Assembly (NCBI RefSeq): GCF_006345805.1 | Contig: NC_043011.1 | Location: forward strand, 35,104,464-35,168,463 | Reading direction: 5' to 3' | Source: Octopus sinensis | Lineage: Eukaryota | Length of the DNA stretch: 64,000 nt | Part shown: positions 471 to 63,936 of the stretch, piece by piece | How the letters are laid out: each line of letters begins with the position of its first letter | Numbering within the stretch: the stretch's first letter is position 1 | Notes under the pieces: generated by a model | What the model saw: only the letters and a program-made list of their open reading frames with translations | Databases searched by the model: none | What the model was told of the DNA's origin: nothing | Made by a program: the position numbers and the translations under genes

Positions 471-697
471 TTAATTATTTCCATTAGGTTTTAATCTTTC
501 TCAATTATTTTTCTGTTTTAAAATATTTTAAATGTTTTTAAAGTACTTTAATTATTTAATTATCATTAAAATCTTTGTCTAAATATTTTCTGATTATGGC
601 TTAATTTTATATCTTTAAACGGAATCTTTCAATTTCTTGCTTTTTAAATCTTTAATCTTAATATTTCATTTTGTTTTATAATATACACTACTTAGAA

Positions 698-975
698 GGC
701 GGCGAGCTGGCAGAATCGTTAGCACGCCGGGCGAAATGCTTAGCAGTATTTCGTCTGCGGCTACGTTCTGAGTTCAAATTCCACCGAGGTCGACTTTGCC
801 TTTCATCCTTTCGGGGTCGATTAAATAAGTACCAGTTACGTACTGTGGTCGATATAATCGACTTAATCCGTTTGTCTGTCCTTGTTTGTCCTCTTTGTGT
901 TTAGCCCCTTGTGGGTAGTAAAGAAATGGGTATTTCGTCTGTCTCTACGTTCTGAGTTCAAATTCCGCCGAGGAT
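698..975 (+). mobile_element. tRNA-head SINE family A with partial second body
   Basis: Head ggcggcgagctggcagaatcgttagc with A-box-like tggcagaatcg and B-box-like gagttcaaattcc; many copies in the window. Confidence 0.85.
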
Positions 976-4811: not shown

Positions 4812-5437
4812 AGGTGGCGAGCTGGCAGAACTATTAGCATGCCGGACAAAACTTTTAGCGGCATTTCGTCCGTCTTTACATTCTGAGTTGAAATACTTTC
4901 TACTATGGGCACAGGTCCTGAAATTTTGGAGAGGGGACTAGTCGATTACGTCACCCCAGTGCTTCACTGGTACTTAATTCACCGACCCCAAAAGGATGAA
5001 TGGCAAAGTCGAACTCGGTGGAATTTGAACTCAGAACGTAAAGACAGACGAAATACCTATTTCTTTATTACCCACAAGGGGCTAAACACAGAGAGGACAA
5101 ACAAGGACAGACGAACGGATTAAGTTGATTATATCGGCCCCAGTGTGTAACTGGTACTTATTTAATCGACCCCGAAAGGATGAAAGGCAAAGTCGACCTC
5201 GGCGGAATTTGAACTCAGAACATAAGGACAGACGAAATACCGCCAAGCATTTTGTCTGGCGTTTTAACGATTCTGCCAGCTCGCTGCCTTCTGAGTTGAA
5301 ATTCTACCATGGTGGACGTTGCCTTTCATCTTTTCGGGATCGATAAATTAAGTACCAGTGAAGCACTGGGATTGATGAAACCAACTTGCTCCATCCCCAC
5401 AAAACTTTAGCCATTATACCTACAGCTGAAAGGATAT
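4812..5437 (+). mobile_element. SINE A interrupted by an antisense SINE A dimer (insert 4895-5288)
   Basis: 14-bp TSD ttctgagttgaaat at 4881-4894 and 5289-5302; the host SINE resumes in register. Confidence 0.85.
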
Positions 5438-5451
5438 TGTGGGTTAACTAA

Positions 5452-5880
5452 CGACGGCGAGCGGGCAGGATCGTTAGCATACGGGGCAAAATATATATTT
5501 TTTCTACTCTAGGCACAAGGCTCGAAACTTTTTAGGAGTGGGAGTCGATTAGCTCGACTCCAGTACACAACTGGTACTTAATTTATCGACCCCGAAAGGA
5601 TGAAAGGCAAAGTCGACCTCGGCGGAATTTGAACTCAGAACGTAATGACAGACGAAATACGGCTAAGCATTTCACCCGGCGTACTAACGTTTCTGCCAGC
5701 TCGCCGCTTTACGGGGCAAAATATTTAGCGGCATTTGAATGCTGAGTTCAAATTCCACCGAGGTCGACTTTACCTTTCCTCATTTCGGGCGTTCATAAAA
5801 CTGGTACTATCTGAGTACCAAGTTCGATAAATGTAATCGATAGACCTCTCCCCGCAAGTTTCAGGCCTTGTGTCTGTTGT
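5452..5880 (+). mobile_element. SINE A interrupted by an antisense SINE A (insert 5495-5709)
   Basis: 15-bp TSD tacggggcaaaatat at 5480-5494 and 5710-5724. Confidence 0.85.
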
Positions 5881-8328: not shown

Positions 8329-8546
8329 GTGTGTGTATGCTTGTGTGTCTGTTTGTCCTCCCACCATCGCTTGACAACCACTGACGGTGTGTTTATACCC
8401 TGTAACTTAGCGGTTCGACAAAAGTGGTCGATAAAATAAGACTAGGCTTACAAAGAATAAATCCTGGGGTTAATTTGTTCGACTCAAAAACCATTCAAGG
8501 CGATGCTCCACAATGGCCGCAGTAAATGACTGAAACAAATAAAACA

Positions 8547-8637
<91 letters not shown>

Positions 8638-8756
8638 ACAATCAAGGAACGGCCATAATAGGCCATTCACCCACTAGAAATAACAGCCAAAGCTTCAAAC
8701 GCAAATAAAGATTAATTCCGTAAACAGGAGAAATTTTAAAAAACATTTACCCTGTA

Positions 8757-8863
8757 ATTTCTTGTACGATGCACCGTTTCATCTGCTGTTTAATGGTAAA
8801 CTAACCTGATTAAATTAAATCAAGCCAATCTTCCATAGGCCCTCAGATTCTTCAGCAAGAAAT
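8757..8863 (-). ncRNA. Type I hammerhead ribozyme (inverted arm copy)
   Basis: Reverse complement reads ATTTCTTG-CTGAAGA-ATCTG...CAGAT-GAAA-CGGTGCATC-GTA-CAAGAAAT. Confidence 0.9.
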
Positions 8864-9460
8864 AGCCAAGTCGGAACAGATATTTTCACGAGGCATTTCC
8901 GACCCTGCCAAGGTAATATCTGACCTAAAATTTTCAAATCGTCGCACTCGCGCCAAATTTATCGGCAGCCAGCAAATAATATAGCCGTCGATTCCATTAC
9001 GGAATTAACCAGAAAATTCATAATTAATCAATATAGGGTGCCAAAAAAAATTTTGTAGAATTCTTTTTGCCACCAGCGGCCTAGTGGGAAAAAATTAAAT
9101 AGTCATAGACCATTTTTAAGTTCAACATCAACAATCAAGGAACGGCCATAATAGGCCATTCACCCACTAGAAATAACAGCCAAAGCTTCAACCGCAAATA
9201 AAGATTAATTCCGTAAACAGGAGAAAATTTAAAAAACATTTACCCTGTAATTTCTTGTACGATGCACCGTTTCATCTGCTGTTTAATGGTAAACTAACCT
9301 GATTAAATGAATTTTCTGGTTAATTCCGTAATGGAATCGACGGCTTATATTTATTTGCTGCCGATAAATTTGGCGCGAGTGCGACGATTTGAAAATTTTA
9401 GGTCGATATTACCTTGGCAGGGTCGGAAATGCCTCGTGAAAATATCTGTTCCGACTGGCT

Positions 9461-9567
9461 ATTTCTTGCTGAAGAATCTGAGGGCCTATGGAAGATTGGC
9501 TTGATTTAATTTAATCAGGTTAGTTTACCATTAAACAGCAGATGAAACGGTGCATCGTACAAGAAAT
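9461..9567 (+). ncRNA. Type I hammerhead ribozyme, copy 1
   Basis: Helix I ATTTCTTG/CAAGAAAT (8 bp), core CTGAAGA 9469-9475, helix II ATCTG/CAGAT, GAAA 9544-9547, near-palindromic helix III ACGGTGCATCGT, GUA cleavage after 9559. Confidence 0.92.
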
Positions 9568-9949
9568 TACAGGGTAAATGTTTTTTAAATTTTCTCCTGT
9601 TTACGGAATTAATCTTTATTTGCGGTTGAAGCTTTGGCTGTTATTTCTAGTGGGTGAATGGCCTATTATGGCCGTTCCTTGATTGTTGATGTTGAACTTA
9701 AAAATGGTCTAGACTATTTAACTTTTTCCCACTAGGCCGCTGGTGGCAAAAAGAATTCTACAAAATTTTTTTTGCCACCCTATATTGATTAATTATGAAT
9801 TTTCTGGTTAATTCCGTAATGGAATCGACGGCATATATTTATTTGCTGCCGATAAATTGGCGCGAGTGCGACGATTTGAAAATTTTAGGTCAGATATTAC
9901 CTTGGCAGGGTCGGAAATGCCTCGTGAAAATATCTGTTCCGACTTGGCT

Positions 9950-10054
9950 ATTTCTTGCTGAAGAATCTGAGGGCCTATGGAAGATTGGCTTGATTTAATT
10001 TAATCAGGTAGTTTACCATTAACAGCAGATGAAACGGTGCATCGTACAAGAAAT
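9950..10054 (+). ncRNA. Type I hammerhead ribozyme, copy 2
   Basis: Same motif intact; predicted cleavage after 10046. Confidence 0.9.
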
Positions 10055-10439
10055 TACAGGGTAAATGTTTTTTAAATTTTCTCTCCTGTTTACGGAATTA
10101 ATCTTTATTTGCGGTTGAAGCTTTGGCTGTTATTTCTAGTGGGTGAATGGCCTATTATGGCCGTTCCTTGATTGTTGATGTTGAACTTAAAAATGGTCTA
10201 TGACTATTTAATTTTTTCCCACTAGGCCGCTAGTGGCAAAAAGAATTCTACAAAATTTTTTTTGGCACCCTATATTGATTAATTATGAATTTTCTGGTTA
10301 ATTCCGTAATGGAATCGACGGCTTATATTTATTTGCTGCCGATAAATTTGGCGCGAGTGCGACGATTTGAAAATTTTAGGTCAGATATTACCTTGGCAGG
10401 TCGGAATGCCTCGTGAAAATTCTGTTCCGACTTGGCTCT

Positions 10440-10546
10440 ATTTCTTGCTGAAGAATCTGAGGGCCTATGGAAGATTGGCTTGATTTAATTTAATCAGGTT
10501 AGTTTACCATTAAACAGCAGATGAAACGGTGCATCGTACAAGAAAT
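10440..10546 (+). ncRNA. Type I hammerhead ribozyme, copy 3
   Basis: Same motif intact; predicted cleavage after 10538. Confidence 0.9.
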
Positions 10547-10928
10547 TACAGGGTAAATGTTTTTTAAATTTTCTCCTGTTTACGGAATTAATCTTTATTT
10601 GCGGTTGAAGCTTTGGCTGTTATTTCTAGTGGGTGAATGGCCTATTATGGCCGTTCCTTGATTGTTGATGTTGAACTTAAAAATGGTCTATGACTATTTA
10701 ACTTTTTCCCACTAGGCCGCTGGTGGCAAAAAGAATTCTACAAAATTTTTTTTGCCACCCTATATTGATTAATTATGAATTTTCTGGTTAATTCCGTAAT
10801 GGAATCGACGGCATATATTTATTGCTGCCGATAAATTTGGCGCGAGTGCGACGATTTGAAAATTTTAGGTCAGATATACGTTGGCAGGGTCGGAAATGCC
10901 TCGTGAAAATATCTGTTCCGACTTGGCT

Positions 10929-11034
10929 ATTTCTTGCTGAAGAATCTGAGGGCCTATGGAAGATTGGCTTGATTTAATTTAATCAGTGTTATTTACCATT
11001 AACAGCAGATGAAACGGTGCATCGTACAAGAAAT
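10929..11034 (+). ncRNA. Type I hammerhead ribozyme, copy 4
   Basis: Same motif intact; predicted cleavage after 11026. Confidence 0.9.
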
Positions 11035-11415
11035 TACAGGGTAAATGTTTTTTAAATTTTCTCCTGTTTACGGAATTAATCTTTATTGCGGTTGAAGCTT
11101 TGGCTGTTATTTCTAGTGGGTGAATGGCCTATTATGGCCGTTCCTTGATTGTTGATGTTGAACTTAAAAATGGTCTATGACTATTTAATTTTTTCCCACT
11201 AGGCCGCTAGTGGCAAAAAGAATTCTACAAAATTTTTTTTGGCACCCTATATTGATTAATTATGAATTTTCTGGTTAATTCGTAATGGAATCGACGGCTT
11301 ATATTATTTGCTGCCGATAAATTTGGCGCGAGTGCGACGATTTGAAAATTTTAGGTCAGATATTACCTTGGCAGGGTCGGAAATGCCTCGTGAAAATATC
11401 TGTTCCGACTTGGCT

Positions 11416-11523
11416 ATTTCTTGCTGAAGAATCTGAGGGCCTATGGAAGATTGGCTTGATTTAATTTAATCAGGTTAGTTTACCATTAAACAGCATGATG
11501 AAACGGTGCATCGTACAAGAAAT
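11416..11523 (+). ncRNA. Type I hammerhead ribozyme, copy 5 (1-nt insertion in helix II 3' strand)
   Basis: Reads cagcaTgatgaaac; core intact; predicted cleavage after 11515. Confidence 0.8.
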
Positions 11524-11912
11524 TACAGGGTAAATGTTTTTTAAATTTTCTCCTGTTTACGGAATTAATCTTTATTTGCGGTTGAAGCTTTGGCTGTTTT
11601 TTCTAGTGGGTGAATGGCCTATTATGGCCGTTCTTGATTGTTGATGTTGAACTTAAAAATGGTCTATGACTATTTAATTTTTTCCCACTAGGCCGCTGGT
11701 GGCAAAAAGAATTCTACAAAATTTTTTTTTTTTGCCACCCTATATTGATTAATTATGAATTTTCTGGTTAATTCCGTAATGGAATCGACGGCTTATATTT
11801 ATTTGCTGCCGATAAATTTGGGGCGAGTGCGACGACGATTTGAAAATTTTAGGTCAGATATTACCTTGGCAGGTCGGAAATGCCTCGTGAAAATATCTGT
11901 TCCGACTTGGCT

Positions 11913-12020
11913 ATTTCTTGCTGAAGAATCTGAGGTCCTATGGAAGATTGGCTTGATTTAATTTAATCAGGTTATAGTTACCATTAAACAGCAGATGAAA
12001 CGGTGCATCGTACAAGAAAT
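11913..12020 (+). ncRNA. Type I hammerhead ribozyme, copy 6
   Basis: Motif intact; predicted cleavage after 12012. Confidence 0.9.
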
Positions 12021-12393
12021 TACAGGGTAAATGTTTTTTAAATTTTCTCCTGTTACGGAATTAATGTTTATTTGCTTTGGCTGTTATTTCTAGTGGGTGA
12101 ATGGCCTATATGCCGTTCCTTGATTGTTGATGTTGAACTTAAAAATGGTCTATGACTATTTAATTTTTTCCCACTAGGCCGCTGGTGGCAAAAAGATTCT
12201 ACAAAATTTTTTTTTGCCACCCTACATTGATAATTATGAATTTTCTGGTTAATTCCGTAATGGAATCGACGCGGCTTATATTATTTGCTGCCGATAAATT
12301 TGGCGCGAGTGTGACGATTTGAAAATTTTAGGTCAGATATTACCTTGGCGAGGGTCGGAAATGCCTCGTGAAAATATCTGTTCCGACTTGGCT

Positions 12394-12499
12394 ATTTCTT
12401 GCTGAAGAATCTGAGGGCCTATGGAAGATTGGCTTGATTTAATTTGATCAGGTTAGTTTAACCATAACAGCAGATGAAACGGTGCATCGTACAAGAAAT
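12394..12499 (+). ncRNA. Type I hammerhead ribozyme, copy 7
   Basis: Motif intact; predicted cleavage after 12491. Confidence 0.9.
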
Positions 12500-12884
12500 T
12501 ACAGGGTAAATGTTTTTTAAATTTTCTCCTGTTTACGGAATTAATCTTTATTTGCGGTTGAAGCTTTGGCTGTTATTTCTAGTGGGTGAATGGCCTATTA
12601 TGGCCGTTCCTTGATTGTTGATGTTGAACTTAAAAATGGTCTATGACTATTTAATTTTTTCCACTAGGCCGCTGGTGGCAAAAAGAATTCTACAAAATTT
12701 TTTTTTTTGCCACCCTATATTGATTAATTATGAATTTTCTGGTTAATTCCGTAATGGAATCGACGGCTTATATTTATTTGCTGCCGATAATTTGGCGCGA
12801 GTGCGACGATTTGAAAATTTTAGGTCAGATATTACCTTGGCAGGGTCGGAAATGCCTCGTGAAAATATCTGTTCCGACTTGGCT

Positions 12885-12991
12885 ATTTCTTGCTGAAGAA
12901 TCTGAGGGCCTATGGAAGATTGGCTTGATTTAATTTAATCAGGTTAGTTTACCATTAAACAGCAGATGAAACGGTGCATCGTACAAGAAAT
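12885..12991 (+). ncRNA. Type I hammerhead ribozyme, copy 8
   Basis: Motif intact; predicted cleavage after 12983. Confidence 0.9.
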
Positions 12992-13247
12992 TACAGGATA
13001 ATGTTTTTTAAATTTTCTCCTGTTTACGGAATTAATCTTTATTTGCGGTTGAAGCTTTGGCTGTTATTTCTAGTGGGTGAATGGCCTATTATGGCCGTTC
13101 CTTGATTGTTGATGTTGAACTTAAAAATGGTCTATGACTATTTAATTTTTTCCCACTAGGCCGCTGGTGGCAAAAAGAATTCTACAAAATTTTTTTTTGC
13201 CACCCTATATTGATTAAATATATTATATATATATATATATAATATAT

Positions 13248-13297
<50 letters not shown>

Positions 13298-13645
13298 CTC
13301 TTGTGTCTGGGGAGAGTAATTTTCTTTTTGTGCCTTAGGTTTAGACATGCACATATATACCATTACCATAAGTTTGTGTTGGCAAGTCGACGAACGATCT
13401 TCGGTGTGATTGCTTGGGCTTCTAAGAAAAAGAAACTACTGCCTTCGTTTTTCTTTCGTCCATTTCTGTTATCGTTTGAGAATCGGTAACGTGAAGCAAA
13501 ATAATTTTTGTGGAGTTTCAGCGTCAAATAAATATTATTTTATTATTTCACTACTTTATTTTATTAACTTATTTTTGGTTTACATTGCTTACACTAATAC
13601 GTATCTTCTAAATTGGTATGTGTGTGCATATGTAAATGTATATAC

Positions 13646-19955: not shown

Positions 19956-20356
19956 AGGCGCAGGAGTGGCTGTGTGGTAAGTAGCTTGCTTACCAACCAC
20001 ATGGTTCCGGGTTCAGTCCCACTGCGTGGCACCTTGGGCGAGTGTCTTCCACTATAGCTTCGGGCTGACCAAAGCCTTGTGAGTGCATTTGGTAGACGGA
20101 AACTGAAAGAAGCCCGTCGTATATATGTATATATATATATATGTGTGTGTTTGTGTGTCTGTGTTTGTCCCCCCAACATCACTTGACAACTGATGCTGGT
20201 GTGTTTACGTCCCCGTCACTTAGCGGTTCGGCTAAGAGGCCGATAGAATAAGTACTAGGCTTACAAAGAATAAGTCCTGGGGTCGATTTGCTCGATTAAA
20301 GGCGGTGCTCCAGCATGGCCGCAGTCAAATGACTGAAACAAGTAAAAGAGTAAAAG
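19956..20356 (+). mobile_element. SINE family B, full length
   Basis: tRNA-like head ggcgcaggagtggctgtgtggtaag..gggttcagtccc, CORE-like cttgggcgagtgtctt, internal (TA/TG)n, tail (gagtaaaa)n. Confidence 0.9.
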
Positions 20357-20486: not shown

Positions 20487-22835
20487 CATGAGAGTGTGTG
20501 TGTGTTTGTGTGTGTATGTGTGTGTTTGTGGCGTGTGTGTGAGTGTTTTTGCGTGGCTGTGAATGCATGTTTGCGCATGTGTGTGATTGTGCTTTTGCGT
20601 GTGTGTGAGTGTGTGTATGTGTGTGTGTGTGTGTGTGTGTGTTTGCGTGGGTGTGAGTGTGTGTTTGCATGTGAATGTGTGTGTGAGAGTGAGTGTTTGC
20701 ATGTGAGCGTGTGTGTGTGTGTGTGTGTGAGTGTGTTTGCATGGATGTGAGTGTGTGTTTGCATGTGAATGTGTGTGTGTTTGCATGTGAATGTGTGTGT
20801 GTGAGAGCGTGTGTTTGCATGTGAGCGTGTGTGTGTGTGTGTGTGTGAGTGTGTTTGCATGGGTGTGAGTGTGTGTTTGCATGTGAATGTGTGTGTGAGA
20901 GTGAGTGTTTGCATGTGAGCGTGTGTGTGTGTGTGTGTGTGAGTGTGTTTGCATGGGTGTGAGTGTGTGTTTGCATGTGAATGTGTGTGTGTTTGCATGT
21001 GAATGTGTGTGTGTGAGAGCGTGTGTTTGCATGTGAGCGTGTGTGTGTGTGTTGTGTGTGAGTGTGTTTGCATGGGTGTGAGTGTGTGTTTGCATGTGAA
21101 TGTGCGTGTGAGAGTGTGTGTTGCATGTGAGCGTGTGTGTGTGTGTGTGTGTGAGTGTGTTTGCATGGGTGTGAGTGTGTGTTTGCATGTGAATGTGTGT
21201 GTGAGAGTGTGTGTTTGCATGTGAGCGTGTGTGTGTGTGTGTGTGTGAGTGTGTTTGCATGGGTGTGAGTGTGTGTTTGCATGTGAATGTGTGTGTGTGA
21301 GAGTGTGTGTTTGCGTGTGAGTGTGTGTGTGTGTGTGAGTGTGTTTGCATGGGTGTGAGTGTGTGTTTGCATGTGAATGTGTGTGTGTGAGAGTGTGTGT
21401 TTGCATGTGAGTGTGTGTGTGTGTGTGAGTGTGTTTGCATGGGTGTGAGTGTGTGTTTGCATGTGAATGTGTGTGTGTGAGAGTGTGTGTTTGCATGTGA
21501 GTGTGTGTGTGTGAGTGAGTTGTTTGCATGGGTTTGAGTGTGTGTTTGCATGTGATGTTGTGTGTGAGAGCGTGTGTTTGCATGTGAGCGTGTGTGTGTG
21601 TGAGTGAGTGTGTTTGCTGGGTGTGAGTGTGTGTTTTTGCATGTGAGTGTGTGTGTGTGTGTAGTGTGTTTGCATTGGTGTGAGTGTGTGTTTGCATGTG
21701 AATGTGTGTGTTGTGAGAGTGTGTGTTTGCGTGTGAGTGTGTGTCTGTGTGTGTGAGTGTGTTTGCATGGGTGTGAGTGTGTGTTTGCATGTGAATGTGT
21801 GTGTGTGAGAGCGTGTGTTTGCATGTGAGCGTGTGTGTGTGAGTGAGTGTGTTTGCATGGGTGTGAGTGTGTGTTTGCATGTGAGTGTGTGTGTGTGTGT
21901 GAGTGTGTTTGCATGGGTGTGAGTGTGTGTTTGCATGTGAATGTGTGTGTGTGAGAGTGTGTGTTTGCGTGTGAGTGTGTGTCTGTGTGTGTGAGTGTGT
22001 TTGCATGGGTGTGAGTGTGTGTTTGCATGTGAATGTGTGTGTGTGAGAGTGTGTGTTTGCATGTGAGTGTGTGTGTGTGTGTGAGTGTGTTAGCATGGGT
22101 GTGAGTGTGTGTTTGCATGTGAATGTGTGTGTGTGAGAGTGTGTGTTTGCATGTGAGTGTGTGTGTGTGAGTGAGTGTGTTTGCATGGGTGTGAGTGTGT
22201 GTTTGCATGTGAATGTGTGTGTGTGAGAGCGTGTGTTTGCATGTGAGCGTGTGTGTGTGTGAGTAGTGGTGTTTGCATGGGTGTGAGTGTGTGTTGCATG
22301 TGATGTGTGTGTGGTGGGGAGTGTGTTTGCATGGGGTGAGTGTGTGTGTTGCATGTGAATGTGTGTGTGTGAGAGCGTGTGTTTGCATGTGAAGCGTGTG
22401 TGTGTGAGTGAGTGTGTTTGCATGGGTGTGAGTGTGTGTTTGCAGTGAGTGTGTGTGTGTGTGTGAGTTGTTTTTGCATGGTGTGATTGTGTGTTTGCAT
22501 GTGAGTGTGTGTGTGAGAGTTGTGTGTTTGCATGTGAGTGTGTGTCTGTGTGTGTGAGTGTGTTTTCATGGGTGTGAGTGTGTGTTTGCTGTGAATGTGT
22601 GTGTGTGTGAGTGTGTGTGTGGTGTGTGTTTGTGCATGGGTGTGAGTGTGTGTTTGCATGTGAATGTGTGTGTGTGTGTGTGTGAGTGTGTTTGCGTGGG
22701 TGTGAGTGTGTGTTTGCATGTGAATGTGTGTGAGTGTGTGTTTGCATGTGAATGTGTGTGTGAGTGTGTGTTTGCATGTGAGCGTGTGTGTGTGTGTGTG
22801 TGAGTGTGTTTGCGTGGGTGTGAGTGTGTGTTTGT
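20487..22835. repeat. (GT)-derived satellite with ~90-bp higher-order repeat
   Basis: Three TTTGCATG-anchored subunits (tgaa, tgag, ggtg) cycle; atgtgaatgt recurs at 21371 and 21461. Confidence 0.9.
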
Positions 22836-26280: not shown

Positions 26281-27624
26281 ACGAGAGAAATATGGAAATA
26301 AGAAAAATAATAATGCCAAGCACGTCAGCGTCGGATAAGCGACGCCAAATAGGCTGCGCCGAAACGGTTGTGTCGCAGCCTTTTCATGTCCATTAAACCA
26401 CTTCGTATGACATTCAAGTGAACTCTTCCATATCAAAGGAATAACCTTCTCACTGACTTTGCAGCTTGAAGTTGTTTGTCATGTCTCCCTTTTCGGATCA
26501 CCTAGCTCGTAGTCGTGTTTACCTCGAACTTCTTCGGAGAAAACATTGCGGTGGAGTCAGTCGATTTTTAGAACCCATCCCGCCTCGTCTCCACACATGT
26601 TGTGAAAAATCAATCAAAATACTTTGTGATTGATTTTAACACTGAGATCGTTCACGGAGTTTCTACATCTCTCAAAATTTCCATTTCGTTTTTTCACACA
26701 TTAATCTGTGTAGGTTGAACTATATAAAATGTTAGAGAAAGAGACCCAGCTCTTTCTTGCAATAAATACATCTACATAAAATTTTTTTCCTGAACCCTTA
26801 AAATACTACGGTGCGTCTACAATCTACTGGTTTTCTTGCATGGACACCCCTAAAAGTCTTACATGGATACCAGGGAACATATGCCCCCCCCCCATCGGGT
26901 GAGAATCAGTGATTTTAAAAGATAATAGTTAAAAAATAATACAGACGTGTGTATAAGTGTGTATGTGTGTATATAATTACTTTTATGTACGTATATATGT
27001 GTATACACATACACAATATATATATATATACATATATATATATAAATCTAGGACGATAAATTACTCTCAACATCTCAAATATTAGATCTAATACACTATT
27101 TGTCAAATACGTTCTGTTTTTATTGTCCAACTTAGTATTTGCTATTTACATTTTACACACTTGCATAATACATGCGCACATATTTATACATATATATGCA
27201 TACTATATATATATATATAGTATGCATATATATGCACAAACAAGCACAAACACGTACGCATACACATACGAACTGACACACAGAGGCATAAATCACGCGA
27301 ATGTCAGAGATAGCCGTTGATATTATGTATAAAATTGGCAAATATAGATAAAAAGTTCAAAAGTTACCAGACGAATGCGTATTGTACGTTATTAAGAATT
27401 GAAATATATTCTATTGGACCATTACAAGTGAAGAAGAAATGGATACTGTGTTCAAAGCTATGTGTCACAAAATATAATCATATATTTATACACCCATAAC
27501 ATTCATGTATAAAAATATTGTAAACACAATTCAAAGGTCCTAATTACGTGCCTTTTCTACATTTGCTATAGAACGTCTAGGCTTTATTCATACATTATTA
27601 AAATTATTATTATTATTATTATTA

Positions 27625-27695
<71 letters not shown>

Positions 27696-27699
27696 GTTG

Positions 27700-27751
<52 letters not shown>

Positions 27752-27770
27752 TATCATTATTATTATTATT

Positions 27771-28313
27771 GAGTGAGAGAGCAGTGTATGCCATCAAAGT
27801 GACACTGGGGTAAAATATATAAGCCCAATATACCCATCATAACTACCTGTCTGATAAGGGTACACTAGGCACATGCATCACAACCATATGATGATCTCAT
27901 GTCAAGATAAATAGCACATGACCTTGCAGGTGGGGCCCAGTTAGAATTTTCTTCTGGTCGAGTAGCCCATCCCGCTCAAAAGGTCCCTGAATAAGGAGTG
28001 TTTAAGGATGTTGAAAGAAACATCCATGTTTCCAAAGTTGAATTATCCAAACCTCTTAGAATTCATTTCAACACACGGCTATGATGCTCCCCCACTACTT
28101 CTGCTCATGATCAGAGATGCACATATCGTCAGCCACTAAGGGACATGCTCAACTGGTTAAGGTCAAACAACTGACAAGCGAATCTGTGGTATTGAGCAGA
28201 ATATTTGATGTAGCCCATCTTATATACCAAGATAAAACAATGTACATGATAACACTTTCAATCAGTTAAGATCAGAAGCCACGAGAGCCACTGCCTGGTA
28301 CTGCAGCAGGGCA
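27771..28313 (-). mobile_element. ~550-bp non-coding interspersed element embedded in (TAA)n/(GAA)n
   Basis: Near-identical copies at 44997, 45313 and 56491, all abutting TAA-type tracts. Strand assigned by TAA polarity. Confidence 0.8.
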
Positions 28314-36019: not shown

Positions 36020-36204
36020 GGGAGAGAGAGAGGGAGAGAGAGAGTGCAGAGAGGGAGAAAAAGAGAGAATGAATGAAAGGGTACAGCACACATGCATACA
36101 CACACACACACGCGCACGCACTCACACACACGCATGCACACATACGCACGCACACACACGCACGCGCACATACGCACGCACACACACGCACGCACACACA
36201 CACG

Positions 36205-36231
<27 letters not shown>

Positions 36232-36236
<5 letters not shown>

Positions 36237-36609
36237 TGCATACATACACACGCACGCACGCATGCACACACGGGCGCATACTCACACACCACAGAATAAT
36301 TTACTATTGACAGAATACACTACGAATCGTTTTGTACGATTGTAATGATTGCGTAACTTACAATGTAAGGATGCGAACTGCAACCGGTCTTGACTGAATA
36401 CCACACACACAACCACACACACACACACACCACACACACACACACATGCATACATACACACGCACGCACGCATGCACACACGGGCGCATACTCACACACA
36501 CACAGAATAATTTACTATTGACAGAATACACTACGAATCGTTTTGTACGATTGTAATGATTGCGTAACTTACAATGTAAGGATGCGAACTGCAACCGTCT
36601 TGACTGAAA

Positions 36610-36620
<11 letters not shown>
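36232..36620. repeat. ~210-bp tandem duplication bounded by (CA)n
   Basis: cagaataatttactattgacagaatacactacgaatcg...gactgaa occurs twice. Confidence 0.9.
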
Positions 36621-36680
<60 letters not shown>

Positions 36681-39750: not shown

Positions 39751-40138
39751 GAGTGGCTGTGTGGCAATTAGCTTGCTTACGAACCTCATAGTTCCGGGTT
39801 CAGTCCCACTGCGTGGCACCTTGGGTAAGTGTCTTCTACTATAGCCTCGGGCCGATTAAAGCCTTATGAGTGGATTCGGTAGACGGAAACTGAAAAAACC
39901 GTGGTATATATATATATGTATATGTGTGTGTATATGTTTGTGTGTCTGTGTTTGTCACCCCAACATCACTTGACAACCGATGCTGGTGTGCTTACGTCCC
40001 CGTAACTTAGCGGTTCGGCAAAAAGAGACCGATAGAATAAGTACTAGGCTTACAAAGAATAAGTTCTGGGGTCGATTTGCTCGACTAAAGGCGGTGCTGC
40101 AGCATGGCCACAGTAAAATGACTGAAACAAGTAATAGA
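39751..40138 (+). mobile_element. SINE family B, near full length
   Basis: Colinear with 19956-20356. Confidence 0.85.
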
Positions 40139-40190
40139 GAGAAGAGAGAGAGAGAGAGAGAGAGAAAAGACATATATGCATATAGATATA

Positions 40191-44439: not shown

Positions 44440-44934
44440 TTGAGATAATAAGCGATGTGAAGGCAGGGAATGAGTTGGAAATAGTTGGCTTATGGCGGCA
44501 TTTTTTCCCATTAATATTCCTTTGTAAAATGAAAGGATTCACCATAGAATTGTAGCAGAACTTCACAGGTTTTTGGAATTGTAATCGCAAAGACCAATTC
44601 TGCTGATCTCTCAGATGTATTAAAACAATCCTGTATTCGTTTGAAATCCATTTTTACCGTTCTTCCTTCCAACTGTTGATATTTCTCTGACGTATTACGA
44701 TTCTAATCATGCATGAGGAACTATCACTGCTATTGTTGTTGTCGTTGTTGTTATTGTATTGTCCTGTACCGTCCTCGATCTGTTTGCAAACCCTTAGAGG
44801 TTACTAAACAAATCATCATCATCATCATCACCATCATCATAATCATCACTATTATTATTATTGTTATTATTATAATTATTATTATTATTATTATTATTTT
44901 ATTATATTATTATTATTATTATTATATTATTATA

Positions 44935-44974
<40 letters not shown>

Positions 44975-44996
44975 TATTTATTATTATTATTTTATT

Positions 44997-45251
44997 GAGT
45001 GAAAGAGCAGTGCATGCCATCAAGTGACACTGGGGTAAAATATACGAAGCCCAATATACCCATCATGACTACCCGTCCGATAAGGGTACACCAGGCACAT
45101 GCATCACAACCATATGTGCGCGACATGGTAATCTCATATCAAGATAACACACATGACCTTGCAGGTGGGGCCCAGTTAAAATTTTCTTCAGTTGAGTAGC
45201 CCATCCCGCTCAAAAGGTCCCTGAATAAGGGTTGTTTAAGGATGTTGAAAG
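44997..45251 (-). mobile_element. Truncated copy of the ~550-bp TAA-associated element
   Basis: Keeps the gagtgagagagc end; (TTA)n on both sides. Confidence 0.8.
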
Positions 45252-45269
45252 AATATTATTATTGTTGAA

Positions 45270-45312
<43 letters not shown>

Positions 45313-45872
45313 GAGTGAGAGAGCAGTGCATGCCATCAAAGTGACAATGGGGTAAAATATACGAAGCCCAGTATACCCATCATGACAACCCGTCTGATAA
45401 GGCTACCCCAGACACATGCATCCCAACCATATGTGCATGATATGGTGATCTCATATCAAGATAAACAGTGCATGATCTTGCAGGTGGGGCCCAGTTAAAA
45501 TTTTCTCCTGGTTGAGTAACCCATCCCACTCAAAAGGTCCCTGAATAAGGGTTGGTTAAGGATGTTGAACGAAACACCCATGTTTCCAGAGGTGAATTAT
45601 TCAAACCCCAAAGAATCCCCTTCAACACATGGCTATGATGCTTCCCTTCTACTTCTGCTCGTGATCAGAGATGCACATATCGTCAGATACTAAGGGACAT
45701 TGTCAAATGGTTATGGTCAAGCAACTGACAAGCAAATTTGTGGTATTGAGCAGAATATTTGCTGTAGCCCATCTTTTATACCAAGACAAAACAATGTACA
45801 TGATAACACTTCCAATCAGTAAGATCAGAAGCCACGAGAGCCACTGCCACTGCCTGGTACTGCATCAGGGTG
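45313..45872 (-). mobile_element. Full copy of the ~550-bp TAA-associated element
   Basis: Colinear with 27771-28313; (TTA)n on both sides. Confidence 0.85.
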
Positions 45873-45908
<36 letters not shown>

Positions 45909-45911
<3 letters not shown>

Positions 45912-48900
45912 TAGTTTTATTTTTATTTTTATAGCGTGCTTTCACTTCACTACCGAGCGCAGCTCTGTGTGCCTTGGGTATGTGCTGTGATTTGTTGTGA
46001 TGCTCTGATGGTTATTGTATGGAAAGTGTTCTGCGTAGGATGTGTGCAGTGCCTAGTAGTGCAATTTTCTGTATGTTATATGTGTTTGTAAGTCCTGGTG
46101 TTTTTGTTATGTATTTGTCTGAATATTTTTTTATCATGCCTAATGCACCTACTATGATAGGAATTGTTTCTGTTTTCAGATTCCACATTCTAGTTACCTC
46201 TATTTCCAGGTCTTTGTATTTTGAGAGTTTCTCCATTTCTTTTAGAGACACGTTGTCATCTGCCGGTACTGATACATCAATTAGAAAGCATTTTTTTTCT
46301 TCATGGTCTCTGACAACTATATCTGGTCTGTTGGCCTTAATTTCTCTATCTGTGTGTATCGGCATATCCCAGAGTATGGTTGCTTTCTCGTTTTCTGTGA
46401 CCTTTTCTGGTGTGTGCCTATACCATCTTTTTTCTGTTGTTATTCCATAATGTTGGCATAGCTTCCAATGTATGTAGTTCCAACTCTGTCATGTCTGTGA
46501 ATATATTCCTTCTTAGCCAGGACTGGGCAGCTAGAGATAATATGATTTATTGTTTCTTGTCCATCTCCACATATTCTGCAGTTACTTGTAATATTTCTTT
46601 TCATTACATGTTTTTGGTAATTTCTGGTGGGGAGGCTTTGGTCTTGTGCTGCAATTAAAAATCCCTCTGTTTCTGCTTTGAGTCCTGAGCTTCTCACCAT
46701 TGCTGGGGTTTTTCTTTGTCTATTTCTTTTGCGTTTAGTTTAGTCCAGTATTTACCATGAAGGGGCTTTTCTTGCCATCGTTTTATCATGGTTCGTTGCT
46801 GTTCTATTTTTAGTTTGGATTTCATTTTTTGTATAGCTTTTGTTGTTTCTTCATCTTCTTCTTCTTCTTCATTTTATTAGGTGGTATGATTTCTTGTTTG
46901 TATTTGTCAGCTTCCTTAAATACTGAGAACAGTTTTTTGTTTTGCTCGTGTTTTGCCGCTATCTGGATCAGTTTTCTTTCCTTCTGAGTAGATATTTTTG
47001 CAGTCCTATGGTGGTTATTTTATAGTAGTTTTCCATCCAGCTGTATAAGGCCTCTACCACCTTCTATACTTTGTATATATAGTCTTTCTATGTCAGATTT
47101 TGGGTGATGCACCTAGATCCTGTCATTATTTTTCTTGTTTTCCTGTCTATTTTGGTCAGTTCATTTCGTGTCCAGTTAAGGATATTGTAGCTGTAACTTA
47201 TAACTGGGACAGCTAAAGTGTTGATACCTATTATCTTGTTTTTAGCATTGAGCTCTGTGTTTAGTATTGATCTAACTCGTCTATAATATTCTTTTTTATT
47301 TTCTCTTTCATTCATTTGTGTGTGTTGTGTCTTATCTAGTTCATGGATTCCTAAGTATTTGTAAGTTTGGCTTTGGTCTAATTCTTTTATTTCATTTGCT
47401 TCATCTAGTGTGATGTTGTTACTCTCTTACTAGTTTTCCTCTTTTCATGGTTACTTTGGCGCATTTTTCTAATCCAAATTTCATATCTATTTCTTTGGTA
47501 AATCCATGAACTGTCTTTAATAGTGTTTCCAGCTGTTTGTCATTTGCAGCGTATAGTTTTAGGTCATCCATATATAAAAGGTGGCTGATCGTTTTGCCGT
47601 AACATTTATATCCGCATCCAGTTCTATTTAGCATATCAGATAGAGGTGACAGTGCCAAGCAGAAAAGGAGTGGAGAGAGCGTATCTCCCTGGAATATTCC
47701 TCTTCTAATGGGGATGTCTTTGGTTTTCATGAGTCCCTCTTTTGTTTGGAGGTGTAGGACTGTTTGCCATTTATTCATAGAGTGCTCTATGAATTTTATG
47801 ATTGTTGGTGCTACTTTGTTAATGGCTAGTGTTTCGAGGATCCATGTGTGGGGGATGCTATAAAACGCCTTTTTGTAGTCAATCCAGGCCATACTGAGGC
47901 CTTTCTTCTTTCTGTGGCTGGTCTTCAGTTATGGCTTTATTAATCATTAGTTGATCTTTACAGCCATATGAGCCCTTGCGGCATCCTTTCTGCTCTTCTG
48001 GGAACAGTTTGTTTTCGTCCAGGTGCTTGTTCAGCCTTTGTGATATCACTGCAGTAAATGCCTTGAACATAGTAGGGAGGCAGGTTATTGGTCTGTAGTT
48101 TTCTGGTTTTTCTGTTTCATTTGATTTGGGAATTAAGATGGTTTTCCCCTTCGTGAGCCATTCAGGCATTGTCTCTGGCTCTGCTAGTACGTTGTTAAAG
48201 TTTTCAGCCAGCTTTTTGTGCATTCCTGTTAGATATTTCAACCAGAGTTGGGGATCTTGTCATGCCCAGGTGCCTTCCAGTTGCTTAGTCTTTGCAGTGC
48301 CTGGGTGACCTCTTCAGTTGTTATGGGGGTCCAAATTTGTTCAGATGCCGAGTTTGTTATTTTGATACTCCTTTTTTTTGGTGGTTCGTTCGCCGACCAT
48401 ATTTCTCCCCAGAATTCTTCCAATTCTTCTGCGCCGTTGGTGCTGCAGTGACTTCTATTTTATTTTTGCCCAGTTCTTGGTAGAACTTTTTGGGGTTGGA
48501 GTTGAACTTTTTGTTTTCTTCAAAGAAGCGTTGGCGTTTCTGGTACCGGCGGATCCTTCGTGCTTTTGGCAAGGATATCTTGCTTCAGCTTTTCTTTTAT
48601 TTCAGGCAAATCTTTTTCTGTGATGTTATATTTGCGGAGTATTTTTGTTCTCTTTTTGTTGCTCAGTAGCGTTGATTCTTTGCTGATTTCATTAAGAATC
48701 GACAGGTCTTTTCTATATTTTTTTTTTATTTTACTTTGGATGTTATTTATCCCAGGGTTTTTGTTTGGGTGGTGGTACTCCTGTTTGGGCGGGTTTGGGT
48801 GAGTATCCAGCTTCTTTTGTGGCTGCAGTGGCTGCTGCGTATATTAGGTTATTTAGCTCAGTGATATCACTTTTTTTTGATTCAGTGGCTATCAGTTCAG

Positions 48901-49907
48901 TGACGGCTAGGTTTATGCTGTTTATAATAGGTGTTGTTATTTCGTTTATTTTGATTCTTGGGAGGTATGGTCGGTGGTCCATTTTGAGCTCTGTGGTTTT
49001 CAGTTCTTTGATTATTTTATTTTTTATATTATCATAATCATTAGGCTCCCCTTCGTTGTTTACATCGTGTTTGTTGGGAATGTTGCGTTTGTCTTCGTGT
49101 TTTACAGTTTCAGTGTTTATATTATTGGGCATTGTTGTGTGGCTTCTATCTACATTTTCCTGGTGTATGTTTTCTTTTAGGTGTTCTATTTCTATTTCTG
49201 ATATTTTTTTTGTGTTGAGAATGTATCTTCGTACGTTAGCTAATTTATTAGGGTTCATTGCTGTATCCAAGTCTAAATCTCTATTATTTTCCTCCCTATT
49301 TTATATGTATGTGTTGTTGTATTTTCATTTTTTGGGTAGAGTACTGCTGTGAAGTATGCGTGTAAGATAGAAATGTATTCCTCACGTGTCCATTTACGTC
49401 TTTTGGGTTTTATTTGCGGGACATGAGGTACAACGTCCGGCCCATTATTTTGACGGTCGTCATTTTCGTAGGGTACCGGTCCGTTTATTTCTGTTGTCAC
49501 ATTATTTCGCACGTGTAGTTTTTCGTACATTTTTTGTTGTAGGTTTAATGTACGTACCGCTCGATTGTTATTCTTGGGTTGAATAGTATCGGTGGCATTT
49601 AATTTCTTCGTAGTTCCTTTGTACATGGTGTTTGGGGTCGGAGATGATCGTGATGTTTCACTCATGTTTACATGTGTTGCGTTAGAGGCGGAGATGATAT
49701 CGAGTCAAAATACATCATTTCGTTTCGAAAATAGTAATAAATTTCAATTTGTATTACTTACTCGGATACAGTCCAATTCTTTGTTAGTAAAACTTTGGCT
49801 CCATAGGATGTCCTTGTTTTCGATGTTTGTAGATAGGTTTCGGAGCTCTGAATTTTCCTTCTTACATCTTAAAAGTCCCCCGGTGTTCTTAGTCCCCCGG
49901 TGTTCCT
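45909..49907 (-). mobile_element. Near full-length R4/Dong-clade non-LTR retrotransposon (single ORF: RT, CCHC, restriction-like endonuclease), frameshifted
   Basis: ORF pieces 49665 to 46012: KRRKWTREEY N-terminus, NYRPITCL, WIDYKKAF.S, GIFQGDTLSPLLF, YMDDLKL, FGLEKC, CRICG..ETINHIISSC, RHDRV, RPDIVV..IDVSVP..K..KY; (TAA)n at both ends. Confidence 0.93.
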
Positions 49908-56425: not shown

Positions 56426-56490
<65 letters not shown>

Positions 56491-56491
<1 letters not shown>

Positions 56492-56891: not shown

Positions 56892-56922
56892 TCTTCTTCT
56901 TCTTCTTCTTCTTCTTCTTCTT

Positions 56923-63900: not shown

Positions 63901-63936
<36 letters not shown>

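What the first reader, a model, noticed from the sequence alone, without database searches (positions are those of the whole stretch)
8632..13217. Tandem array of ~489-bp units, each with a complete type I hammerhead ribozyme: candidate cephalopod retrozyme / circular RNA locus
Seen: every unit reads ATTTCTTG-CTGAAGA-ATCTG-(~58 nt)-CAGAT-GAAA-CGGTGCATC-GTA^-CAAGAAAT. That gives an 8-bp helix I, the CUGANGA/GAAA core, a 5-bp helix II, a near-palindromic helix III and a GUA triplet. There are nine full copies (8 on +, 1 on -). Predicted cleavage sites 9559, 10046, 10538, 11026, 11515, 12012, 12491 and 12983 give monomers of 479-497 nt. The core is unchanged in all copies. Established: tandem HHR repeats (newt satellite 2, Schistosoma SM-alpha, Dolichopoda pDo500, metazoan non-LTR retrozymes) are transcribed as multimers that self-cleave to monomers, and retrozyme monomers accumulate as circular RNAs. 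Inference: this is a protein-less, ribozyme-processed retroelement that borrows an RT in trans. The T6-T8 runs in the unit argue against Pol III read-through. I cannot confirm whether this family has been described.
Basis: partly seen in the sequence, partly recalled or inferred. Interest (0 to 1): 0.95.

Follow-up and report, generated by a model that had tools for sequence, protein, structure and literature searches.

The report
Hammerhead-ribozyme tandem repeat (animal retrozyme)
This is a 4.6-kb block of about 490-base repeats, each carrying a self-cutting hammerhead RNA motif, and it fits a mobile-element class already known in animals ("non-LTR retrozymes"), so it is a good new example rather than a new kind of thing.

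Summary
Window 8632-13221 contains 9.4 copies of a 491-nt, 36.7% GC unit with no ORF. Eight units are direct (9300-13221, +). Another 1.39 units are inverted, head-to-head, at the left end (8632-9311).

The motif occurs nowhere else in the window and in none of 100 shuffles. Rfam misses it at gathering level. Confined to one copy, Hammerhead_1 is the top hit in the same register (15.9 bits against 34), penalised for a 58-nt arm in helix II.

Helix III is weak as a hairpin (-1.2 kcal/mol) but is a 12-nt self-complementary sequence (-19.5 kcal/mol as a duplex). A dimer transcript is predicted to form a double hammerhead. That implies cleavage in multimers and stable monomer circles, as in newt satellite 2.

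The block sits inside an (AT)n microsatellite. Both outer ends are RNA-sense 3' ends. This is the tandem-plus-inverted signature of target-primed reverse transcription typical of Penelope-like elements.

Best reading: a new family of metazoan non-LTR retrozyme. Not tested: cleavage, circles, copy number and host (cephalopod unverified). Interest is moderate, not 0.95.

The parts
8549..8632 (.). Left (AT)n microsatellite, one half of the target site
   Evidence: TRF period 2, 42.5 copies. It abuts unit position 133 of the inverted part.
8632..9311 (-). Inverted, 5'-truncated part of the insertion: 1.39 units (unit positions 439-492, 1-492, 1-133 read on the minus strand). Its RNA-sense 3' end faces the left flank.
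   Evidence: blastn; inverted-repeat arms 96-99% complementary to the direct units, nearest arms 194 nt apart; junction alignment.
8757..8863 (-). Complete type I hammerhead on the minus strand. Predicted cleavage is after the A at 8765.
   Evidence: Regex; descriptor gives helix I 8 bp, II 5 bp, III 4 bp.
9250..9311 (-). Truncated hammerhead. It has helix I 3' strand, GUA, helix III, GAAA and part of the helix II arm, but no CUGAAGA half.
   Evidence: 24-mer match at 9250-9273. The unit breaks off at position 439.
9300..9311 (.). Head-to-head inner junction between the inverted and direct parts, with TGATTAA / AT microhomology
   Evidence: Junction alignments; overlapping BLAST hits.
9300..13221 (+). 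Direct tandem array of 8.0 units. The 5' end is at unit position ~237 and the 3' end at ~234-238. Units 1 and 3 versus 2 and 4 share variants, indicating a 2-unit higher-order repeat.
   Evidence: TRF; blastn; junction alignments; shared-variant table.
9461..9567 (+). Hammerhead 1, cleavage after 9559
9950..10054 (+). Hammerhead 2, cleavage after 10046
10440..10546 (+). Hammerhead 3, cleavage after 10538
10929..11034 (+). Hammerhead 4, cleavage after 11026
11416..11523 (+). Hammerhead 5, cleavage after 11515. The core is intact but a 1-nt T insertion gives a bulge in the 3' strand of helix II.
   Evidence: It fails the strict descriptor for this reason alone.
11913..12020 (+). Hammerhead 6, cleavage after 12012
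12394..12499 (+). Hammerhead 7, cleavage after 12491
12885..12991 (+). Hammerhead 8, cleavage after 12983. This is the copy that Rfam Hammerhead_1 aligns end to end below threshold.
13218..13297 (.). Right (AT)n microsatellite, the other half of the target site
   Evidence: TRF period 2, 41.5 copies. The unit merges into it at position 234-238.

Best explanation
The block is one genomic insertion of a non-autonomous, non-coding retroelement of the metazoan 'non-LTR retrozyme' type.

Shown by the sequence:
- There are 9.4 copies of a 491-nt unit.
- Each complete copy encodes, on one strand only, a type I hammerhead.
- Its helix III is too weak to stand alone but is a 12-nt self-complementary sequence.
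- The insertion lies in an (AT)n microsatellite with both RNA-sense 3' ends facing outward and an inverted, 5'-truncated partial copy upstream.

Inferred mechanism:
1. The array is transcribed, probably by Pol II, because U6-U8 runs would stop Pol III inside every unit. The product is a plus-strand multimer.
2. Neighbouring hammerheads pair through helix III into double hammerheads and cut after GUA. [quoted passage not shown]
3. A host tRNA-type ligase closes them into circles. The circles persist because a lone helix III is unstable.
4. A reverse transcriptase supplied in trans copies the circle, or an uncut multimer, by target-primed reverse transcription at a nicked (TA)n site. It starts in the accessible AU-rich loop at unit positions 222-247 and goes round about eight times. 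A Penelope-like element is the most likely source, a LINE less likely.
5. A second priming event on the other target strand produces the inverted 1.4 units. The two cDNAs join at TGATTAA microhomology.
6. Later unequal exchange adds the 2-unit periodicity.

Whether this particular copy is still transcribed is unknown.
For: Array and copies.

Motif specificity: 0 matches in 100 shuffles and none elsewhere in the window.

Its helix III stem ACG/CGU is identical to the model consensus.

Folding:
- The hammerhead-competent fold is -31.0 kcal/mol against an MFE of -31.5.
- Helix III is -1.2 kcal/mol as a hairpin and -19.5 as a 12-bp duplex. In the MFE of a 598-nt dimer transcript the two helix III segments pair with each other.
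- The plus-strand monomer folds at -147 kcal/mol (z -5.6) against -101 (z -3.4) for the minus strand.
- The circle is -145.7 kcal/mol, 62% paired, z -5.8, with helices I and II formed and III open.

Unit features: consensus GC is 36.7% and no ORF exceeds 57 aa. There is no B box, polypurine tract or plus-strand AATAAA.

Conservation: hammerhead-essential positions carry 1 of 82 copy differences against 8.3 expected (P = 0.0015).

Insertion signature:
- (AT)n lies on both sides.
- The outer junctions fall at unit positions 133 and 234-238, not at the cleavage site. The inner junction is head-to-head with microhomology.
- Both ends of the direct array fall in the longest unpaired stretch of the predicted circle, with P(unpaired) 0.73 against 0.36 overall.

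Literature:
- Features of non-LTR retrozymes: PMC7229834, PMC7761336.
- Penelope-like element insertions are partial tandems with an adjacent inverted 5'-truncated copy and a (TA)n bias: PMC8557442.
- Retrozymes as derivatives of Penelope-like elements, with consensus lengths of 51-972 bp: bioRxiv 10.64898/2026.07.22.740005.
Against: - There is no experimental or transcript evidence of any kind.
- Rfam Hammerhead_1 is far below its gathering score (15.9 against 34 bits) and invisible in normal scans.
- The 10.1-11.1 pair is A-U, whereas G-C is described as highly conserved (PMC4209133).
- No loop 1/loop 2 tertiary contact can be recognised, because helix I is an uninterrupted 8 bp and helix II carries a 58-nt arm.
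- Only one locus is visible, so mobility rests on the architecture of a single insertion.
- No relative was found in any searchable collection, though none of these holds the host genome.
- No Penelope-like element is in the window. The only RT there is a decayed LINE.
- Twin priming is also known for LINEs, so the partner is not settled.
- Copy differences are about half indels, and substitutions are mostly transversions (14 transitions, 29 transversions). Some may be assembly errors, which weakens the conservation argument.
Confidence: 0.7

Rival explanations
1. Dead relic or plain satellite. The array is an old, silent copy (or a locally amplified satellite) whose hammerhead motif survives only because the copies are young. 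Nothing is cleaved or circularised today.
For: - Copies differ by 2-7%, and one unit carries 21 differences including a 9-nt deletion.
- A 2-unit higher-order pattern points to unequal crossing-over, as in satellites.
- The pair at 10.1-11.1 is A-U, and Rfam scores the motif below threshold.
- There is no recognisable promoter.
Against: - The core and helices are intact in 9 of 9 complete copies, and differences are depleted there (1 against 8.3 expected).
- The strand-specific RNA structure is strong.
- The insertion signature shows that the family was mobile at least once.
- Related tandem hammerhead repeats are constitutively expressed wherever they have been tested (PMC7229834).
Confidence: 0.2
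2. Not a separate non-autonomous family, but a run of pseudo-LTR or terminal sequence from an autonomous Penelope-like element that lost or never included the ORF. Alternatively, it is a retrozyme mobilised by a LINE rather than by a Penelope-like element.
For: - Penelope-like elements carry hammerheads in their pLTRs and insert as tandem/inverted structures in microsatellites (PMC4209133, PMC8557442).
- Xenopus retrozymes are sister to pLTRs (bioRxiv 10.64898/2026.07.22.740005).
- Twin-priming inversions are classic for LINEs (established knowledge: Ostertag and Kazazian 2001), and a LINE RT is in the window.
Against: - Eight uninterrupted units contain no ORF remnant.
- The hammerhead has a real helix III, unlike the minimal Penelope-type variants (PMC4209133).
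- The unit has no similarity to the LINE or to anything else in the window, and no poly(A) or LINE-like tail.
Confidence: 0.12
3. Hairpin-RNA locus. Read-through transcription across the inverted 680-nt arm and the direct units gives a long double-stranded RNA with a 194-nt loop, which feeds small-RNA silencing of the family. The ribozyme is incidental.
For: Inverted arms 8632-9311 and 9506-10181 are 96-99% complementary with a 194-nt spacer.
Against: The inverted arm is explained more simply as a by-product of integration (PMC8557442). There are no small-RNA data. This reading does not explain the conserved hammerhead or the 8-unit array. It is compatible with the main explanation rather than an alternative to it.
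Confidence: 0.08
4. Chance motif or assembly artefact. The hammerhead-like pattern arose by chance in a satellite, and the inverted part is a fold-back chimera from long-read assembly.
For: There are many single-base indels between copies. Tandem repeats are hard to assemble.
Against: The descriptor finds 0 hits in 100 shuffles. The Rfam alignment is in full register. The inversion is not symmetric, since unit position 439 meets position 237, so it is not a simple fold-back of adjacent sequence.
Confidence: 0.02

Closest known systems
Metazoan non-LTR retrozymes (Cervera and de la Pena 2020, PMC7229834; e.g. the Mytilus galloprovincialis 350-390-bp repeats and the Acropora 220-240-bp repeats)
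   Same: Head-to-tail repeats, each with one type I hammerhead on one strand. GC is low (36.7%). There is no ORF, LTR, PBS or PPT. The monomer is predicted to be highly self-paired. As in mussels, the archetypal loop 1/loop 2 contacts are not recognisable.
   Different: - The unit is longer (491 nt against the ~170-400 nt first described, though within the 51-972 bp later reported).
- Helix II carries a 58-nt imperfect arm, helix I is 8 bp and the 10.1-11.1 pair is A-U.
- Rfam scores it below threshold.
- Expression and circles are not shown here.
Newt/salamander satellite 2 and the axolotl HHR_Amex retrozymes (dimeric hammerheads)
   Same: Helix III is weak and capped by a palindromic loop, so that two neighbouring motifs form one extended helix III. 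The prediction is poor cleavage as a monomer and good cleavage as a dimer (PMC7229834).
   Different: Here the stem is 3-4 bp with a UGCA loop and 12 nt of self-complementarity, against 1-2 bp in amphibians. There is no sequence similarity. The unit is 491 nt against 330-350 bp.
Penelope-like elements and their pLTR hammerheads (PMC4209133, PMC8557442)
   Same: The insertion architecture matches: a partial tandem plus an adjacent inverted 5'-truncated copy, sited in a (TA)n microsatellite with no discernible target-site duplication. The hammerhead is predicted to act as a dimer. Helix II is longer than usual.
   Different: There is no RT or GIY-YIG ORF. [quoted passage not shown] No 30-40-bp 'tail' was recognised.
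Schistosoma Sm-alpha and the cave-cricket pDo500 hammerhead repeats (Rfam RF00163 seed type)
   Same: Type I topology. The helix III stem ACG/CGU is identical to the RF00163 consensus. The organisation is tandem or dispersed repeats.
   Different: Sm-alpha is SINE-like with Pol III boxes. This unit has no B box within 2 mismatches and contains U6-U8 runs. Loop 2 is replaced by a 58-nt arm.
Plant LTR retrozymes (PMC4918200)
   Same: The proposed life cycle is the same: hammerhead-processed transcript, then circular RNA, then reverse transcription in trans.
   Different: Plant elements have type III hammerheads inside LTRs, a PBS and a PPT, GC above 55% and Gypsy-type mobilisation. None of these is present here.

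Membership tests
Hammerhead ribozyme, type I | Conserved core: C3 U4 G5 A6 N7 G8 A9, G12 A13 A14, the A15.1-U16.1 pair, and H17 not G | tested here: met
   CUGAAGA ... GAAA ... GUA|C is present and unchanged in all 9 complete copies. Rfam aligns the same register.
Hammerhead ribozyme, type I | Three helices around the core, with helix I open and helices II and III closed | tested here: met
   Helix I is 8 bp, helix II is 5 bp plus a 58-nt arm, and helix III is 3-4 bp with a UGCA loop. The competent fold is within 0.5 kcal/mol of the MFE.
Hammerhead ribozyme, type I | G10.1-C11.1 pair at the base of helix II (highly conserved, not absolute) | tested here: not met
   The pair is A10.1-U11.1 in every copy. 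PMC4209133 calls G10.1-C11.1 highly conserved.
Hammerhead ribozyme, type I | Score at or above the Rfam RF00163 gathering threshold | tested here: not met
   No hit at gathering level or at E<=10 over 4.9 kb. A search confined to one copy gives 15.9 bits against 34, E = 0.21. The penalties are for 58 nt in loop 2 and 6 nt in loop 3.
Hammerhead ribozyme, type I | Loop 1/loop 2 tertiary interaction | tested here: inconclusive
   Helix I has no internal loop within its 8 bp. Helix II has an internal loop after 5 bp. No canonical contact nucleotides can be assigned. Mussel retrozyme hammerheads also lack them (PMC7229834).
Hammerhead ribozyme, type I | Site-specific self-cleavage | not testable with these tools
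   This needs in vitro transcription of a monomer and a dimer.
Metazoan non-LTR retrozyme | [quoted passage not shown] | tested here: met
   8.0 direct units of 479-497 bp. Published range: 150-450 bp (PMC7229834) and 51-972 bp (bioRxiv 10.64898/2026.07.22.740005).
Metazoan non-LTR retrozyme | Low GC (<45-50%) with no ORF, LTR, PBS or PPT | tested here: met
   GC is 36.7% and the longest ORF in a consensus trimer is 57 aa. There is no purine run of 10 or more and no LTR. A PBS was not searched for specifically.
Metazoan non-LTR retrozyme | Highly self-paired monomer RNA | tested here: met
   The circle folds at -145.7 kcal/mol, is 62% paired and has z -5.8. The linear form has z -5.6.
Metazoan non-LTR retrozyme | Expressed as linear and circular monomer RNAs | not testable with these tools
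   No transcriptome of the host could be reached. A protein-space search with the unit's ORFs found nothing.
Metazoan non-LTR retrozyme | Many dispersed loci in the genome (mobility) | not testable with these tools
   There is one locus in the window. The pattern scans gave no true match in metagenome, prokaryote-genome or viral collections, and none of these holds the host genome.
Penelope-like-element-type insertion | Partial tandem with an inverted 5'-truncated copy next to its 5' end | tested here: met
   The inverted 1.39 units have their 5' end (unit 439) against the 5' end (unit 237) of the direct array. Described for Penelope-like elements in PMC8557442.
Penelope-like-element-type insertion | Insertion into a microsatellite, often (TA)n, with no clear target-site duplication | tested here: met
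   (AT)42 lies on the left and (AT)41 on the right.
Penelope-like-element-type insertion | RT plus GIY-YIG endonuclease ORF (autonomous element) | tested here: not met
   There is no ORF in the unit. The only RT in the window is a LINE-type RVT_1 at 46-49.7 kb. This is consistent with a non-autonomous passenger, not a Penelope-like element itself.
Dimeric (double) hammerhead, newt satellite 2 type | Helix III unstable alone but palindromic, so two motifs share an extended helix III | tested here: met
   The hairpin is -1.2 kcal/mol and the 12-bp duplex ACGGUGCAUCGU is -19.5 kcal/mol. The dimer MFE pairs the two segments.
Plant LTR retrozyme | Type III hammerheads in LTRs, with PBS and PPT | tested here: not met
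   Type I topology, no LTR and no PPT.
Sm-alpha-like Pol III SINE | Internal A and B boxes, with a transcript not interrupted by T runs | tested here: not met
   There is no B box within 2 mismatches. U6, U6 and U8 runs occur in the plus RNA.

The most novel reading that the evidence does not exclude
This may be an undescribed retrozyme family, possibly the first from a cephalopod if the host is one. Its hammerhead escapes Rfam because helix II carries a 58-nt arm and the 10.1-11.1 pair is A-U.

The locus may also preserve a twin-primed integration event. Both outer ends are internal positions of the unit, in predicted single-stranded AU-rich loops of the circle. The direct part is a whole number of laps (8.0). 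The target is (TA)n. If so, this would be direct structural evidence that a circular or multimeric retrozyme RNA is copied by rolling-circle target-primed reverse transcription using Penelope-like machinery. The literature so far only infers this step from co-occurrence and pLTR similarity.
Probability: 0.35. Interest if true: 0.5.

Novelty: new member of a known kind. Interest (0 to 1): 0.35.

Why it matters
Tandem hammerhead repeats are a known, ribozyme-based route to abundant circular RNAs in animals. How they move is still argued. The 2020 review states that the repeats show no motif that reveals their partner element (PMC7761336).

This locus adds two useful things. First, its hammerhead variant (long helix II arm, A-U at 10.1-11.1) is invisible to standard Rfam annotation, so such families are probably under-counted. 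Second, a single clean insertion has a layout that points to target-primed reverse transcription of a template without a fixed end: a (TA)n target, an inverted 5'-truncated copy, junctions away from the cleavage site, and a whole number of laps.

If confirmed across many loci of the host genome, this would support mobilisation by Penelope-like elements through RNA circles. It does not open a new class of biology.

Tried and rejected
- **Rfam.** The whole window at gathering level gave nothing. Positions 8500-13400 at E<=10 gave only noise hits: mir-297 on (AT)n, rli47 and WT1-AS_2. Hammerhead_1 appeared, below threshold, only in a 126-nt search.
- **Relatives through protein space.** Four unit ORFs, concatenated, were searched against 5.8 billion proteins with no hit.
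- **DNA pattern scans.** The metagenome scan gave two hits, L001 and L002. Both are chance, because only the 16-mer matches and there are no helices. Prokaryote genomes and viral contigs gave none.
- **Naming the host.**
  - The LINE RT ORF is not on record.
  - RT homologues reach 61% identity at best.
  - The LINE C-terminal part is 86-88% identical to an unannotated NCBI contig (GCA_024449705.1) and a Logan run (SRR7158634). I could not find the organism for either.
  - Sequence strings of the hammerhead and of the window's SINE are absent from the paper library.
  - My recollection that the SINE resembles an octopus SINE is only a lead.
- **Simple inversion of part of a direct array.** Rejected, because unit positions at the junctions are not continuous (133 at the outer end, 439 against 237 at the inner junction).
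- **Fold-back assembly chimera.** Rejected for the same asymmetry.
- **Pol III SINE.** Rejected on the missing B box and the U runs.
- **Coding element.** Rejected.
- **Covariation.** It could not be used, because the copies are too similar.

Full report
**1. What is there**

Tandem Repeats Finder reports one large array at 9300-13221, with period 490, 8.0 copies and 95% matches. I cut a monomer at the predicted cleavage site (12492-12983) and compared it with the whole window. This shows two parts.
- The direct part, 9300-13221, is unit positions 230-492, then seven complete units, then positions 1-240.
- The inverted part, 8632-9311, read on the minus strand, is positions 439-492, one complete unit, then positions 1-133.

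Nothing else in the 64 kb resembles the unit. The consensus is 491 nt and 36.7% GC. Its longest reading frame, even through a trimer, is 57 codons.

**2. The hammerhead**

Cleavage sites fall exactly at 9559, 10046, 10538, 11026, 11515, 12012, 12491 and 12983, and after 8765 on the minus strand.

In standard numbering the motif reads:
- helix I: AUUUCUUG/CAAGAAAU, 8 bp;
- C3-A9: CUGAAGA;
- helix II: AUCUG/CAGAU, 5 bp, continued by a 58-nt imperfect, G.U-rich arm;
- G12-A14, then A15.1: GAAA;
- helix III: ACG(G)/(U)CGU, closed by UGCA;
- U16.1 A17, then the cut.

A structural descriptor I wrote finds 8 of the 9 copies. The ninth, at 11416-11523, fails only because a single T is inserted in the 3' strand of helix II. 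The descriptor finds nothing elsewhere in the window and nothing in 100 dinucleotide-preserving shuffles. A tenth motif at 9250-9311 (-) is cut off by the inversion junction.

Rfam finds no hammerhead at gathering level or at E<=10 over the array. When the search is confined to one copy, Hammerhead_1 (RF00163) is the best family. It aligns over all 45 model positions in the same register at 15.9 bits (gathering 34, E = 0.21). Most of the cost comes from 58 nt inserted in loop 2 and 6 nt in loop 3. The helix III stem ACG/CGU equals the model consensus.

So the motif is real and complete by the classical definition, but it is an outlier. The base pair at 10.1-11.1 is A-U, where G-C is described as highly conserved (PMC4209133). 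No loop 1/loop 2 contact can be assigned.

**3. Folding**

- The 107-nt motif folds at -31.5 kcal/mol (z -4.1).
- The hand-built catalytically competent secondary structure costs only 0.4-0.5 kcal/mol more.
- Helix III alone is worth -1.2 kcal/mol.
- Its 12 nt, ACGGUGCAUCGU, are self-complementary (ten Watson-Crick and two G.U pairs) and form a -19.5 kcal/mol duplex.
- In the minimum-energy fold of a 598-nt dimer transcript the two helix III segments pair with each other over all 12 positions. This is the double-hammerhead arrangement known from newt satellite 2 and the axolotl retrozymes, which cleave poorly as monomers and well as dimers (PMC7229834).
- The plus-strand monomer is much more structured than its complement: -147 kcal/mol (z -5.6) against -101 (z -3.4). 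This fits its G>C and U>A skews.
- As a circle the RNA is 62% paired at -145.7 kcal/mol (z -5.8). Helices I and II are formed and helix III is open.

**4. Variation among copies**

There are 82 differences from the consensus, 43 substitutions and 39 indels, and most are private. Only one falls in the 49 hammerhead-essential positions, against 8.3 expected (binomial P = 0.0015). I treat this as suggestive only. The excess of indels and transversions (14 transitions, 29 transversions) hints that some differences are assembly errors.

Units 1 and 3 share three variants. Units 2 and 4 share two others. This is a 2-unit higher-order repeat. It shows either later unequal exchange or a heterodimeric template.

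**5. How the block got there**

It lies inside an (AT)n microsatellite, with 84 bp on the left and 80 bp on the right. Junction alignments show four things.
- The right end of the direct array stops at unit position 234-238 and merges into (AT)n.
- The left end of the inverted part stops at unit position 133.
- The two parts meet head-to-head, unit 439 against unit 237, sharing TGATTAA/AT microhomology.
- Both outer ends are therefore RNA-sense 3' ends, and both 5' ends are internal.

This is the topology of twin-primed, target-primed reverse transcription. It is also the layout described as typical for Penelope-like elements: partial tandems, an adjacent inverted 5'-truncated copy, a (TA)n bias and no clear target-site duplication (PMC8557442).

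Neither 3' junction is at the ribozyme cleavage site. The template therefore had no fixed 3' end, which suits a circle or an uncut multimer, not a linear monomer.

The direct part is a whole number of laps, from position 237 to 234-238. Both of its ends lie in the longest unpaired stretch of the predicted circle (222-247). Mean P(unpaired) there is 0.73 against 0.36 overall, and the stretch lies just 3' of a 16-bp hairpin. I infer priming in an accessible AU-rich loop and termination at a pause site. This is inference from one locus.

A simple inversion and a fold-back assembly chimera are both excluded, because the junction positions are neither continuous nor symmetric.

**6. Promoters and polymerase**

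The unit has no B box within two mismatches, no TATA consensus, no plus-strand AATAAA and no polypurine tract. It contains U6, U6 and U8 runs. Transcription by Pol II or by read-through is inferred, not shown.

**7. Comparison with what is known**

Type I hammerheads in short, low-GC, non-coding tandem repeats are the defining picture of metazoan non-LTR retrozymes. [quoted passage not shown] A 2026 preprint extends consensus lengths to 51-972 bp and argues that they derive from pLTRs of Penelope-like elements (10.64898/2026.07.22.740005). A giant-squid genome paper lists 235 Rfam Hammerhead_1 hits (PMC6962438). I found no description of a cephalopod retrozyme, and no paper containing this sequence.

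The element here meets every membership criterion that sequence alone can test. It differs in detail: a 491-nt unit, an 8-bp helix I, a 58-nt helix II arm and A-U at 10.1-11.1.

**8. What could not be done**

No collection available here holds the host genome or its transcriptome.
- The protein-space search with the unit's ORFs found nothing.
- DNA pattern scans found nothing real in metagenome, prokaryote-genome or viral collections.
- The host could not be named. The closest relatives of the window's decayed LINE are an unannotated NCBI contig and a Logan run of unknown organism.

The label 'cephalopod' is therefore unverified. The window is clearly a repeat-rich, AT-rich animal-type genome with SINEs, a LINE and very many microsatellites.

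**9. Verdict**

The object is a new member of a known class. The most interesting residue is the integration signature, together with the fact that standard Rfam annotation would miss this hammerhead.

Noticed in passing
window 690-973, 4940-5290, 5543-5711, 50139-50464, 62194-62788; fragment at about 8400-8548: An interspersed SINE-like element of about 280-350 bp, with copies 87-93% identical. At 62246-62738 it forms 2.7 tandem 184-bp sub-units. A fragment lies directly before the (AT)n tract that received the hammerhead array, so that microsatellite may be the SINE's own tail. ARAGORN finds no tRNA gene in the window.
   Followed up: partly
window 46012-49665 (minus strand): A decayed LINE. 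RVT_1 is split over two frames (47419-48241), with ORF1-like and C-terminal ORFs around it. It has no GIY-YIG domain, so it is not a Penelope-like element. Its closest relatives, at 86-88% amino-acid identity over the C-terminal part, are NCBI contig JAANSU013411523.1 (GCA_024449705.1) and Logan run SRR7158634. Finding the organism of these two records would narrow down the host.
   Followed up: partly
window 19956-20356, 39751-40146, 58105-58511 (also 63323-63523 and 63718-63912, inverted): A second dispersed repeat family of about 400 bp, 88-92% identical. It is unrelated to the hammerhead unit.
   Followed up: no
window 20494-22835: A 2.3-kb degenerate (GT)n-like tract (63% matches). It produces spurious His/Thr-rich ORFs of up to 767 codons.
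   Followed up: no
window 27614-28295 versus 44850-45848, and 45458-45932 versus 56432-56892 (inverted): Segments of 400-600 bp are repeated at 84-90% identity and are bordered by trinucleotide microsatellites ((ATT)n, (TTC)n(TTA)n). This may be another repeat family with microsatellite tails.
   Followed up: no
window 8632-9311 versus 9506-10181: The inverted and direct hammerhead units form a 680-bp inverted repeat with a 194-nt spacer. A read-through transcript would be a long hairpin RNA and a possible small-RNA source.
   Followed up: partly
window 36193-36674: A 211-bp unit repeated 2.3 times (93% matches), embedded in (CA)n tracts.
   Followed up: no
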